DNA of 56,230 nucleotides, counting the filler, from Bipalium vagum (Eukaryota), in assembly GCA_037834085.1 (NCBI GenBank). It is 3 parts of 3 records of this genome, joined end to end, with 100 filler letters (N's around TTAATTAATTAA, not from the genome) between each part and the next. Parts side by side here need not be neighbours in the genome. Positions count along the whole stretch, not along the records: positions 34,576 to 56,230 come from JBBMKC010234053.1; 2 more parts are not named here. One strand, written 5' to 3'. Within the stretch, counting starts at the first letter, position 1, and every line of letters begins with the position of its first letter. Positions 47,601 through 50,600 of this stretch are shown piece by piece. Both the position numbers and the translations under genes were made by a program. Under the pieces are notes generated by a model. That model was not told the DNA's origin and made no database searches. It saw only the letters and a program-made list of their open reading frames with translations.

Positions 47601-50600
47601 ATATCAGCGGTTTTTCTCTGTTGTTTGCTTTAATTAATTTATAAGGCACCTACCTTCCTGAACTTTTCCGTGTTATTCAACCGGTTTAAAATCGCTTTTC
47701 GCATTACTCTCAGTGATGTAGCTAATTGTTCTTGTGATTGAGCATCGTCTTCGTCCAATAACCTTTGCAGTTCAACGTTTTCAAATTTTTGGTAGTTTTC
47801 CAGCTCTTTATCAGTCACATCGAAATCAGCAGTTTTCAATTCTTTAAACCACTATCGACAGAGTCTTTCTTATAAATATGGTTGGCATAAGACTAAAATC
47901 TTATTATGTGCATTGGCAACCGTTTTCTTCAAATTAAACATAAAACCAAAACTTCCACAAATGGCATTTTCGAAACTGAAATATCTTGATATAAAATGCA
48001 AAATTGAAAATGAAGCATAATTATTTTTCAAAATTGCAAGATAAATAGCGCCTAAACTGTACTACAGATAGCAATAATTTTATTTTAAAATATTTCTTTG
48101 TTAAAGAATGACAAACATAATTTAAAAAACGGTAGTCATACTGTACACCTAATAATAATAATAATTTCAATGTTTGATTATATATTTTAAAAATATATTT
48201 ATAGGAAATACTGGAGACTGTTCAGCCTACATTATAGAAAAATAATGGATAATTATTTTAATATTTCCGTGTCAACCAAAGTGAAGCCGCATAATAAATC
48301 ATCTAAAGTTTTCATTATTAAAGATTGATAAATTATGTTGTCTTATCAATCGTAATTCAAATTTGTTTTGTGGGTTTTAAATAAGATTAATAATAGATAA
48401 GTTAGAATGTTTAAAAATTTACTACAATTTTAGAGGCAATCAATTTAGAGTTCAAAACGATTTTTCTGTATTAGAGACCGATCTGTGGTCAAAGAAATTT
48501 TCATCAAGATATGCACTTACACTTTGAAGTACCGATCCAAGGCTAGTAAATCAATACATTGTTGAGCTCAACAACTTACTGTTTCAATAATCTTAAAAGT
48601 AGATATCAAGTAATATCATTTCAAGAAAAAATCGAAGAAAAAATATGAGTTTCTTAGCATTAGTAACATTTTTAGGTGTGAAAAATTTATGAGAATTAAA
48701 TGTAATTGAAAAATTACAAATAATAATCAATAGGAATCAAATTATTTGTTTCTCAATATATTGATGCACAAAATTGAATTCAAATGAATACTGCAAGGTT
48801 TAAGGCTTTTTTATGATGATCAAAAATCTTAATAATTTCGACATTTAAATGAAAATATTATTCAAAATCATTGAAAAATGATTTATTTTGACAGTTTCAA
48901 AACATTTAATGATTTAAAATAAATGAATTATCACTATTGATAAAAAAATATTTCCAATCAATAAACTTTAATGAATTCATTTTTCAATATAAACAATCAT
49001 ATAATTATGTTTAATTTGATTATTGATAAAAACAATTTTTCGTTCTATGACAAAATTCAATATTTTTATCACTGAAAGTTTTGAATTTGTGACAATGATA
49101 ATAATCATACTAATGATATATACATATATATACAAAAAGAAAATAAAAATTAATAAAATAATCAATTTATTATTATTATTATAAGAAAAAATAATAAATC
49201 CTTTAAGGCACAGACACCTGTTTACATGCTTTTAACAAAAAATTCTAAGTAGGGCGACACGAATCGATGAATGAGTTAAATATTTCTGATAATGTGATGA
49301 ATTTCGAACGCTGTGTAGTTTAATTTTTAAGGTTGTTTTAAAAAATAACCCATTGCTATTCATAAGTATCAAATAAAGTGAGATCAAAATGCTTCCAATA
49401 TTTAAACTTTAATAAGAGACAAGTTGATAGTTTTCATCAATCTTACACATTGCACTAAATATTTAATATCAAAATCTGCTTGATCCTGTTTTTAGAAGAA
49501 TATTTTGATAATTTTTAATTCGGATAAATAAAATTTTAAAGCTTTTTTTATCAAGAAATCATTAAAAAATTGTCGGACTATCTAGAACTATTTTTTTCAA
49601 TTTCAATATGATTTTTATATTTTTCAATATTATCAATGGGTTGATGAAATGAAGTTCTAAAAGTATTTTTGAATACATTTGTGCCTAATTACTGAAATTA
49701 AAATTAGAAAAATATTGAAAAACAATGAAAACCAGATAAATGAATGAATAATTTTAACGAACCATATACAATCAATAAAAATATTTATAATACAAATCTA
49801 TGAAAAGTAATCAATTAATCATAATGACTATAATTAATAGATCTTTTCATTACAAGACGACCAGACCTAACTCAGCTCCTACTAACCATTGAATGATCGA
49901 CTTGATGCAGGAAATAACTGAAAGGGGAGCATGTCCATGAAACTGCATTCTCCATCGCTGTGAGACACTGAACACGCATGATAGATCCAATATCTAGAGA
50001 AACCATTCGTTCAAAACATTTTTCATAAAAAAGCCGAGATGTCCAAATGCTAAGAAACACATACATGCAACAGTCAAACATTTATAGCACTTGGACACCA
50101 GCAGGTCTGGTCGCTACACCCCATCAAAGAAAAAGAGCAAGCAATCGGCAAAAAGTATTATCTATACATCGAAACACAAATTGGAACATGCTTACCATTG
50201 ACCTGTCTATTTCTTGAACGAAATAGTTTATCGAATTATTGGTCCATGAGACTCGACCTGTCAGACAAGTCCTCGTAGTGACTCTCATAATCGAGCAAAT
50301 ATCTGCAAGGCACAAATGATCAACACACCCTCCTTCAACATCCACCCTTTAGGAATCGATTGATTCCCCCACAGAATCATTAACACACAAACATATCAGT
50401 CAATAACTATCAAAGTTTCTTTTTTATTTCCTTTGAAGGAGAACAATCACATCATTAACACAAGTTTAAAGCATAAAGAGCGAAAACAATAGTTCATTAC
50501 ATTCTAAATCGATTCAAAGAATCAATAATAAGCTTGAATTCCAAAAAGTAATCTATTTTCACAAAGATTTATTGGGAAACACTTCACATATTTAAACCAA

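What the first reader, a model, noticed from the sequence alone, without database searches (positions are those of the whole stretch)
49858..50113. Selector-docking RNA pairing that would loop out exon 7b
Seen in the sequence: in the pre-mRNA, CGACCAGACCU (50113-50103, in the 7a-7b intron) is the perfect complement of AGGUCUGGUCG (49868-49858, starting 19 nt into the intron after 7b). It extends by G.U pairs at both ends and by a bulged CU/AG. A GC-rich 11-mer complement exactly bracketing an alternative exon is unlikely in such AT-rich DNA. Established knowledge: downstream docking-site/selector pairing controls mutually exclusive exons in insect 14-3-3zeta and Mhc. Inference: pairing hides 7b and selects 7a, and melting it allows 7b.
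Basis: partly seen in the sequence, partly recalled or inferred. Interest (0 to 1): 0.8.

Follow-up and report, generated by a model that had tools for sequence, protein, structure and literature searches.

The report
RNA helix bracketing alternative DOT1L exon
Two GC-rich intron segments that pair perfectly sit on either side of the second of two interchangeable exons in a DOT1L histone-methyltransferase gene, far more strongly than chance predicts, so they probably help decide which exon is used; this could not be tested with relatives or RNA data.

Summary
On the minus strand, CGACCAGACCU (50113-50103) is the exact complement of AGGUCUGGUCG (49868-49858). G.U pairs extend it to 13 bp (50114-50102 with 49869-49857).

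- **The gene:** it is a DOT1L/grappa H3K79 methyltransferase of an AT-rich spiralian most like flatworms, not an insect.
- **The exons:** 7a (50302-50196) and 7b (49993-49887) are both 107 nt, in the same phase, and cover the same DOT1 domain positions. Using both or neither breaks the frame.
- **Strength of the helix:**
  - no shuffle matched it (0/5000 dinucleotide, 0/2000 local-composition);
  - it is the strongest short-range perfect helix in the 21.6-kb piece;
  - its predicted pairing probability is about 1.
  - The same test on three bivalve DOT1L loci, which carry an annotated pair of alternative exons at this position, found nothing.
- **A second helix:** an 11-bp helix (50318-50308 with 49686-49676) ties the 7a polypyrimidine tract to a site 200 nt after 7b.

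The architecture matches the downstream pairing of Drosophila serpent, which selects the upstream exon. No competing second selector was found. No RNA-seq exists, and no relative's locus reaches exon 7. Function is therefore plausible (about 0.45), not shown.

The parts
50102..50114 (-). 5' arm of the inner helix (core 50113-50103, CGACCAGACCU; G.U pairs at both ends). It lies in the 202-nt intron between exons 7a and 7b, 83 nt after the 7a donor and 110 nt before the 7b acceptor.
   Evidence: (I17)
49857..49869 (-). 3' arm of the inner helix (core 49868-49858, AGGUCUGGUCG). It starts 19 nt into the intron after exon 7b, inside a 40-nt patch of 45% GC that is followed by 17% GC intron.
50196..50302 (-). 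Exon 7a, 107 nt. Acceptor ccttgcag, donor gtaagc. Encodes [35 protein letters not shown] and matches DOT1 profile positions 172-203.
49887..49993 (-). Exon 7b, 107 nt. Acceptor ttctctag, donor gttagt. Encodes [35 protein letters not shown] and matches DOT1 profile positions 173-205. It is the copy most like the single exon of other flatworms.
50308..50318 (-). 5' arm of the outer helix (CAUUUGUGCCU). It covers positions -16 to -6 of the exon 7a acceptor, that is, its polypyrimidine tract.
   Evidence: (I16)
49676..49686 (-). 3' arm of the outer helix (AGGCACAAAUG), about 200 nt into the intron after exon 7b.
   Evidence: (I16)
50038..50099 (-). Local 15-bp hairpin (50099-50085 with 50052-50038, two G.U pairs, 32-nt loop). 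It starts 2 nt after the inner 5' arm and ends 44 nt before the 7b acceptor.
   Evidence: in both the minimum-energy and centroid structures; coordinates read
52229..52433 (-). Constitutive exon 6 of the DOT1 domain. It ends ...RNLD G|gtaaga in phase 1, and both 7a and 7b complete the codon with AT.
46687..46722 (-). Next constitutive exon ([12 protein letters not shown]), the counterpart of LEKYF..LKNP in other animals.
   Evidence: compared

Best explanation
**What it is.** The two arms form a stable long-range intronic RNA helix in the pre-mRNA of a DOT1L-type H3K79 methyltransferase gene. The helix has 11 perfect pairs (13 with G.U).

**How it would work.** The helix closes a 234-nt loop that holds exon 7b with its branch region, acceptor and donor. 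It also draws the region just after the 7a donor towards the intron that leads to exon 8. By analogy with the downstream pairing (stem II) of Drosophila srp, this would bias the choice between the two frame-incompatible exons towards 7a. Exon 7b would be used when the helix is open, for example through RNA-binding proteins, helicases or splicing that outruns folding.

**Context.** The helix is probably part of a larger nested fold. That fold also contains an 11-bp helix tying the 7a polypyrimidine tract to a site 200 nt after 7b, and a 15-bp hairpin next to the 5' arm.

**Shown versus inferred.** Shown: the complementarity, its statistical excess, its dominance in predicted folds, and the exon anatomy. 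Inferred: that it forms in vivo, that it was selected for, and the direction of its effect.
For: - The complementarity is exact at the stated coordinates.
- No shuffle reached its energy: 0/5000 dinucleotide and 0/2000 block shuffles.
- It is the strongest perfect helix of span 600 nt or less in the 21.6-kb piece.
- The same test on three bivalve loci with a pair of alternative exons at the same position gave no signal in 18 comparisons. The test therefore does not light up on introns in general.
- The helix is in the minimum-energy and centroid folds of 361 nt and 821 nt.
- Its pair probabilities are about 1.0 in contexts of 361, 821 and 1301 nt.
- Forbidding either arm costs 12-14 kcal/mol of ensemble free energy.
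- The arms sit in GC-enriched intron (38% and 45%, against 25% for the flanking introns).
- The exons are a true alternative pair: both are 107 nt, in the same phase, and cover the same DOT1 segment.
- Both exons keep the VSWT...Y motif when aligned to human DOT1L residues 286-322.
- By reading the codons, skipping both exons gives an immediate TGA, and including both gives a stop a few codons into the exon after exon 8.
- The same arm layout is proven by mutation and rescue to select the upstream exon in srp (PMC4691838).
Against: - There is no expression data at all. Only one run holds this DNA, it is not on record as RNA (kind not on record), and its contigs match the window without a difference across the exon 7 region (49200-52050).
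- No orthologous locus with both exons was obtained, so conservation and compensatory change are untested.
- No second selector competes for either arm. This is one stem, not a demonstrated switch.
- The bivalve exon pairs manage without any comparable helix. Frame incompatibility plus protein factors could therefore be sufficient.
- In the predicted ensemble, 7a's polypyrimidine tract and donor are the more buried (probability unpaired 0.15). The 7b signals inside the loop stay fairly open (0.39-0.47). The net direction of the whole fold is therefore ambiguous.
- The helix was picked out by eye, so some look-elsewhere penalty applies. The empirical estimate is about 0.005, larger than the shuffle values suggest.
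Confidence: 0.45

Rival explanations
1. Unselected complementarity. The two 11-mers match by accident or drift. The helix may or may not form, and exon choice is set by splice-site strength, protein factors and decay of out-of-frame products.
For: - Only one species was seen, with no conservation data.
- A comparably strong 10-bp helix (-23.6) exists elsewhere in the same gene with no obvious role.
- Bivalve loci with the same exon pair have no such helix.
- The finding was selected by eye from a large window.
Against: - No shuffle matched it: 0/5000 and 0/2000, about 8 standard deviations beyond the shuffle mean.
- It is the top helix of the whole piece and sits exactly around the alternative exon.
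- A second, nested 11-bp helix also touches a splice signal of the same exon cluster.
- The arms lie in local GC islands within AT-rich intron.
Confidence: 0.3
2. The helix is functional but works differently from the reader's model. Three variants are possible.
- It acts together with the outer helix, which masks the 7a polypyrimidine tract, so that the folded state favours 7b or skips both exons. Skipping both gives an unproductive transcript with a premature stop, which would lower the dose.
- The 5' arm (containing GACCUG) toggles between the docking site and CAGGUC at the end of exon 7a (50205-50200), next to the 7a donor.
- The helix hides a decoy donor-like UAG|GU inside the 3' arm.
For: - The outer helix has pair probability about 1. 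Freeing it raises the unpaired probability of the 7a polypyrimidine tract from 0.15 to 0.51.
- 7a's signals are more buried than 7b's in the ensemble.
- The next-best partners of both arms lie inside exon 7a and at its donor (-19 to -21 kcal/mol, imperfect).
- Skipping both exons gives an immediate stop (read).
Against: - The alternative pairings are weak and interrupted, and were not tested against a null.
- The outer helix is not significant when whole introns are searched (9/60 shuffles).
- Looped-out exons are, in tested systems, the ones skipped (PMC4691838).
Confidence: 0.15
3. The inverted repeat promotes back-splicing of exon 7b into a circular RNA, as flanking intronic complements do for many circular RNAs.
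For: The arms flank a single internal exon at short distance (110 nt and 19 nt), which is the geometry that favours back-splicing.
Against: - From memory, characterised circular-RNA repeats are usually 30-40 nt or longer. This one is 13 bp.
- A 107-nt exon is short for efficient circularisation.
- No RNA data exist to show a back-splice junction.
Confidence: 0.06
4. The arms are terminal inverted repeats or another remnant of a mobile element.
For: The piece contains several mariner-like remnants, one of them in the same intron at about 47100-47850.
Against: - The 13-mer has no other copy in the window at up to 2 mismatches.
- The segment between the arms is the ancestral-type coding exon, not transposon sequence.
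- No target-site duplication is visible.
Confidence: 0.02

Closest known systems
Drosophila serpent (srp) exons 4.1/4.2: bidirectional RNA pairing, stem II 'downstream pairing' (Yue et al. 2016, PMC4691838)
   Same: - It is a two-exon mutually exclusive cluster.
- One arm lies in the intron between the two variants and the other in the intron after the last variant.
- The stem loops out the second exon. By mutation and rescue it is required for use of the first exon.
   Different: - srp also has an upstream pairing (stem I) that selects the second exon. Here the best partner between the upstream and middle introns is only 8 bp and unremarkable.
- The srp elements are conserved across Drosophila. 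Conservation is untested here.
- The srp docking site lies upstream of exon 5. Here the 3' arm sits 19 nt after exon 7b.
- The gene and the phylum differ.
Docking-site/selector systems of insect Dscam1 exons 4, 6 and 9, 14-3-3zeta and Mhc (reviewed in PMC6071210; PMC3535345)
   Same: Intronic complementary elements around tandem homologous exons. The pairing approximates one exon to its constitutive partner and loops out the others.
   Different: Those systems are defined by several selectors competing for one docking site. Only one partner exists here. The duplicated-arm origin proposed by Ivanov and Pervouchine leaves similar intron flanks, and none are seen here.
Human/mouse ATE1 exons 7a/7b: competing intronic structures R1-R5 (Kalinina et al., PMC7797038)
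   Same: A two-exon mutually exclusive pair controlled by short intronic helices, including a long-range one that encloses the cluster. This is comparable to the inner plus outer helices here.
   Different: In ATE1 two elements compete for a shared partner, and the elements are conserved in mammals and validated by mutagenesis and antisense oligonucleotides. Here the two helices are nested and compatible, and nothing is validated.
Bivalve DOT1L exon pair (Pecten maximus X1/X2, Dreissena polymorpha X1/X2, Mytilus spp., Sinanodonta woodiana; NCBI annotation)
   Same: - The exon position is the same.
- In the three species whose loci were read (Pecten, Sinanodonta, Mytilus) there are two tandem copies, each 107 nt and in the same phase.
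- In all four genera the annotated isoforms differ only in this exon.
   Different: - The middle intron is 446-468 nt rather than 202 nt.
- No outstanding flanking helix is present.
- The introns cannot be aligned with each other or with the window.
- The duplication is probably independent. A gastropod, a cestode-like and another neodermatan locus each have a single exon.

Membership tests
Mutually exclusive exon pair | Tandem homologous exons of equal length and phase that encode the same protein segment | tested here: met
   Both exons are 107 nt with AG/GT boundaries. Both match Pfam DOT1 positions about 172-205 and human DOT1L residues 286-322. They share 16 of 35 amino acids and 55 of 107 nucleotides.
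Mutually exclusive exon pair | Using both or neither destroys the reading frame | tested here: met
   107 is not a multiple of 3. By reading the codons, exon 6 joined to exon 8 gives G+CT TGA. 7a followed by 7b runs out of frame to a TAA early in the exon after exon 8.
Mutually exclusive exon pair | Transcripts contain one or the other exon | not testable with these tools
   No RNA run holds this locus. Indirect support only: bivalve genes with the same pair have both isoforms annotated.
Docking-site/selector competing-structure system (Dscam1, 14-3-3zeta, Mhc type) | One docking site complementary to two or more selector sequences that compete for it | tested here: not met
   At up to 2 mismatches the only match to the 13-mer is its partner. 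The next-best partners of each arm are interrupted duplexes of -19 to -21 kcal/mol inside exon 7a.
Docking-site/selector competing-structure system (Dscam1, 14-3-3zeta, Mhc type) | Pairing conserved, with compensatory changes, across species | not testable with these tools
   The only close relative's contig (L001; exon nucleotide identity 77-79%) ends 860 nt after exon 6. Searches with the exon 7 reading frames found no relative.
Bidirectional pairing (srp type) | Downstream pairing: middle intron with the intron after the last variant exon | tested here: met
   13-bp helix 50114-50102 with 49869-49857. No shuffle matched it (0/5000) and its pair probability is about 1.
Bidirectional pairing (srp type) | Upstream pairing: intron before the first variant exon with the middle intron | tested here: inconclusive
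   The best candidate is 7-8 bp (UACACCCU at 50974-50967 with GGGGUGUA at 50121-50114), at -14.4 to -16.5 kcal/mol. It was not tested against shuffles. Helices of that size were ordinary in shuffles of the other intron pairs.
Bidirectional pairing (srp type) | Disruptive and compensatory mutations shift exon choice | not testable with these tools
   This needs an experiment.
DOT1 family H3K79 methyltransferase (the host gene) | DOT1 catalytic domain (Pfam PF08123) | tested here: met
   The exon reading frames hit PF08123 at 1.4e-17 and 2.1e-18, and 7b at 2.6e-05 above the curated cut-off. The best proteins are named H3 lysine-79 specific methyltransferases.
Circular-RNA-promoting flanking inverted repeats | Long complementary repeats (typically tens of nucleotides or more) in the introns flanking the circularised exon | tested here: not met
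   Only 11-13 bp pair. No longer complementarity flanks exon 7b. The length criterion is recalled from the literature, not checked here.

The most novel reading that the evidence does not exclude
A flatworm-like spiralian has two interchangeable versions of the DOT1L segment that lines the substrate-lysine channel. The choice between them is set by a nested pair of long-range intronic RNA helices. If so, this would be, as far as I know, the first structure-controlled mutually exclusive splicing outside arthropods and vertebrates. It would also be an alternative catalytic pocket for the only H3K79 methyltransferase, and it would have arisen in parallel with the same exon duplication in bivalves.
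Probability: 0.3. Interest if true: 0.75.

Novelty: new member of a known kind. Interest (0 to 1): 0.55.

Why it matters
**The protein.** DOT1L is the sole enzyme for H3K79 methylation. The duplicated exon encodes the counterpart of human residues 286-322. From memory of the DOT1L structures, this segment includes the S304-W305...Y312 part of the lysine channel and leads into the helix that contacts ubiquitin on H2B. Two alternative versions of that segment would mean two enzymes with potentially different substrate handling from one gene. No paper in the library links DOT1L to mutually exclusive exons of this kind.

**The mechanism.** RNA-pairing control of mutually exclusive exons is established in arthropods and a few mammalian genes. 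A case in Spiralia would widen its known range. It would also offer a very compact system (about 650 nt) for mutational tests.

**The parallel.** The same 107-nt exon pair in bivalves, with both isoforms annotated, shows that this position in DOT1L is a recurrent target of exon duplication. That is worth study whatever the helix does.

Tried and rejected
- **Expression.** The run search found one holder. It is not on record as RNA, and its contigs match the window without a difference across the exon 7 region. It gave no splicing or polymorphism information.
- **Relatives.**
  - A search with the 7b reading frame found no candidate.
  - The exon 6 frame found one close relative, P0157/L001, but its 2.8-kb contig stops before exon 7.
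  - A profile of 7a, 7b and a cestode-like exon found only a distant neodermatan contig, L003.
  - Conservation of the helix therefore could not be tested.
- **Whole-sequence duplex energy as a statistic.** This was meaningless, because shuffles folded better than the real pair. It was replaced by a best-uninterrupted-helix statistic. One earlier script timed out.
- **A shared motif with Pecten.**
  - Pecten has CCAGACCA pairing with UGGUCUGG in the analogous introns, with the same core as the window's arms.
  - The motif is absent from Sinanodonta and Mytilus.
  - The Pecten helix is ordinary against shuffles (59/300 and 164/300).
  - It was rejected as coincidence.
- **Conserved intronic blocks among bivalves.** The introns are unalignable at this depth.
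- **A second selector or an srp-like upstream stem.** Not found.
- **Transposon inverted repeats.** Rejected, because there are no other copies.
- **Joined models.** Exons were searched one at a time by reference, and frame consequences were read by eye from the exon ends.
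Full report
**1. What is at the coordinates**

The gene runs on the minus strand. CGACCAGACCT occupies 50113-50103 and its exact reverse complement AGGTCTGGTCG occupies 49868-49858 (pair I17). G50114.U49857 and G50102.U49869 lengthen the helix to 13 bp. After a bulged U49870, two more pairs (C50101-G49871 and U50100-A49872) are possible, as read. The 3' arm begins at the 19th base of the intron after exon 7b. The 5' arm lies 83 nt after the 7a donor and 110 nt before the 7b acceptor.

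**2. The gene and the exons**

The reading frames around the site belong to a DOT1-type H3K79 methyltransferase. Pfam PF08123 is hit at 1.4e-17 and 2.1e-18 by the two upstream exon frames.

- Exon 6 (52433-52229) ends ...RNLD G|gtaaga in phase 1.
- Exon 7a (50302-50196) and exon 7b (49993-49887) both start with AT, which completes that codon. Both are 107 nt with normal AG and GT boundaries.
- Both match the same end of the DOT1 profile, positions 172-205.
- Both align to human DOT1L residues 286-322 and keep VSWT......Y.
- The next exon is 46722-46687 ([12 protein letters not shown]), the counterpart of LEKYF..LKNP elsewhere.

Because 107 is not a multiple of 3, only one of the two exons can be used productively. 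Reading the codons at the exon ends shows two outcomes. Skipping both gives G+CT TGA. Including both runs out of frame to a TAA early in the exon after exon 8. I did not build or search a joined model; exons were searched one at a time by reference.

The large intron after 7b (49886-46723) carries a mariner-like transposase remnant at about 47100-47850.

**3. What organism**

The piece has 20-38% GC. Named proteins that best match the DOT1 exons are from Schistosoma, Mesocestoides and Protopolystoma, closely followed by bivalves at about 60-62% identity each. Exon 7b is most like the single exon of neodermatan flatworms (22 of 35 identical to S. japonicum). The source is therefore an AT-rich spiralian, most likely a flatworm, and not an insect. 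This assignment is moderate in strength.

**4. Is the helix more than chance?**

The stacking energy is -24.5 kcal/mol (Watson-Crick pairs only) or -28.0 (with G.U).

| Null model | Shuffles reaching the observed energy |
|---|---|
| Dinucleotide shuffles, middle intron against first 200 nt of downstream intron | 0/5000 |
| Dinucleotide shuffles, middle intron against whole 3.3-kb downstream intron | 2/1000 (Watson-Crick), 7/1000 (with G.U) |
| Block shuffles (15, 25, 40 nt) that keep local GC patches | 0/2000 (Watson-Crick), at most 1/2000 (with G.U) |

- Shuffles understate the repeats found in real DNA. I therefore scanned the real 21,655-base piece for all perfect helices of span 600 nt or less. 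This helix is the strongest, and the runner-up scores -23.6. With one or two such helices per piece, the chance that one brackets this exon within the two adjacent 200-nt intron stretches is about 0.005.
- As a control, the same test on the equivalent introns of three bivalve DOT1L genes gave nothing beyond 9/300 in 18 comparisons. The statistic does not light up on introns in general.
- The 13-mer has no further copy in the window, which argues against a repeat-family origin.

**5. Does it dominate the fold?**

- The helix is in the minimum-energy and centroid structures of 361 nt (z = -2.1) and 821 nt (z = -3.1).
- Its pairs have probability about 1.0 in contexts of 361, 821 and 1301 nt.
- Forbidding either arm costs 12-14 kcal/mol of ensemble free energy.

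Two further elements belong to the same predicted architecture.

- **An outer 11-bp perfect helix.** It joins CAUUUGUGCCU (50318-50308, positions -16 to -6 of the 7a acceptor) to AGGCACAAAUG (49686-49676). Its probability is about 1. It is unusual when the search is limited to sequence near the exons (3/3000 and 4/1500) but not over whole introns (9/60).
- **A 15-bp hairpin.** It spans 50099-50085 with 50052-50038, immediately 3' of the inner 5' arm.

The middle intron (38% GC) and the first 40 nt after 7b (45% GC) are GC islands in introns of 25% GC. The next 160 nt drop to 17%.

**6. How it most likely works**

The layout has one arm between the two variants and one arm after the last variant. 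That is the layout of stem II in Drosophila srp. There, disrupting either arm abolishes use of the upstream exon, and the compensatory double mutant restores it (PMC4691838). By that analogy the inner helix would loop out 7b and favour 7a. I give this 0.45.

The direction is not secure. In the predicted ensemble 7a's polypyrimidine tract and donor are mostly paired (probability unpaired 0.15). The 7b signals inside the loop are more open (0.39-0.47). Freeing the outer helix opens the 7a tract to 0.51. The folded state as a whole could therefore favour 7b, or could favour skipping both exons to give an unproductive transcript.

The 5' arm also has weaker alternative partners inside exon 7a and at its donor. 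That hints at a toggle, but I did not test those against a null.

**7. What could not be tested**

- No RNA run holds the locus. The single run that holds the DNA matches the window without a difference across the exon 7 region.
- The closest relative available is a Logan contig with 97% amino-acid and 77-79% nucleotide identity in the exons. It ends 860 nt after exon 6.
- Two further protein searches aimed at exon 7 found no relative.

**8. Context from other animals**

- Pecten maximus, Dreissena polymorpha, three Mytilus species and Sinanodonta woodiana have annotated DOT1L isoforms that differ only in this exon.
- In the Pecten, Sinanodonta and Mytilus loci the two copies are tandem, each 107 nt, and separated by 446-468 nt.
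- A gastropod (Lymnaea), a cestode-like contig and another neodermatan contig each have a single copy.
- The duplication is therefore recurrent or repeatedly lost. Both copies in the window share flatworm-type residues (SIMRV), which favours a separate duplication, but 35 residues cannot settle this.
- The bivalve introns are not alignable and carry no outstanding helix. RNA pairing is thus not a general requirement for this exon pair.

**9. Comparison with known systems, and novelty**

- **Works like:** the helix works like srp stem II, and more loosely like the ATE1 7a/7b structures (PMC7797038).
- **Membership:** it does not meet the defining feature of a docking-site/selector system, which is several selectors competing for one docking site. 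I do not file it there.
- **Literature:** no paper in the library connects DOT1L with mutually exclusive exons of this kind, and none describes structure-controlled mutually exclusive splicing in flatworms or molluscs.
- **Rating:** new member of a known kind.

**10. Verdict**

The exon pair and the helix geometry fit a known, experimentally proven mechanism. Function, direction and conservation are unproven.
- Interest is 0.55.

Noticed in passing
L004 16186-16292 and 16739-16845; L005 40253-40359 and 40820-40926; L006 22354-22460 and 22929-23035: Bivalve DOT1L genes (Pecten, Sinanodonta, Mytilus; also Dreissena by its protein isoforms) carry the same tandem pair of 107-nt exons. NCBI isoforms use one or the other. 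The first copy resembles the general animal sequence (LRGSVSWTGKPV). The second resembles the gastropod and flatworm type (SGAVSWTGKAF or GKPF). I found no paper on this.
   Followed up: partly
L007 35708-35815; L002 6860-6961; L003 1613-1720: Lymnaea stagnalis, a cestode-like contig and another neodermatan contig each have only one copy of this exon between the flanking constitutive exons. The pair in the window and the pair in bivalves are therefore either independent duplications or survivors of repeated loss.
   Followed up: partly
window 50318-50308 with 49686-49676 (minus strand): A second perfect 11-bp complement ties the polypyrimidine tract of the exon 7a acceptor to a site about 200 nt after exon 7b. 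Its predicted pair probability is about 1, and it nests around the inner helix.
   Followed up: partly
window 50099-50085 with 50052-50038 (minus strand): A 15-bp hairpin (two G.U pairs, 32-nt loop) starts 2 nt after the inner 5' arm and ends 44 nt before the 7b acceptor. It could stack on the long-range helix or position the branch region.
   Followed up: no
window 50196-50189 with about 50144-50137 (minus strand): In the predicted folds the exon 7a donor (G|GUAAGCA) is paired with UGCUUGCU about 50 nt downstream. The probability that the donor is unpaired is 0.15.
   Followed up: no
window 50107-50102 and 50205-50200 (minus strand): The inner 5' arm contains GACCUG, whose ACCUG matches the 5' end of U1 snRNA as I recall it. 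It can pair with CAGGUC at the very end of exon 7a. The 3' arm itself contains a donor-like UAG|GU. A toggle or decoy-donor role is conceivable but untested.
   Followed up: no
window 46319-46310 with 45880-45871 (minus strand): This is the second-strongest short-range perfect helix of the piece (GACGGGGACU with AGUCCCCGUC, -23.6 kcal/mol). It joins two downstream coding regions of the same gene across an intron. Its meaning is unknown.
   Followed up: no
window about 47100-47850 (minus), 40852-41376 (plus), 36578-37194 (minus): Mariner/Tc1-like transposase remnants. One lies inside the intron after exon 7b. Its HTH-like reading frame (47639-47839) could be mistaken for an exon.
   Followed up: no
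L004 16606-16615 with 17157-17166: Pecten has UUCCAGACCA pairing with UGGUCUGGGA in the analogous introns. The CCAGACC/GGUCUGG core is the same as in the window's arms. The motif is absent from Mytilus and Sinanodonta and ordinary against shuffles, so it is taken as coincidence.
   Followed up: yes
protein P0002 (Gryllus longicercus, 757 aa): This annotated cricket protein contains two complete DOT1 catalytic domains in tandem. It is either a tandem gene duplicate fused by annotation or a real two-domain protein.
   Followed up: no
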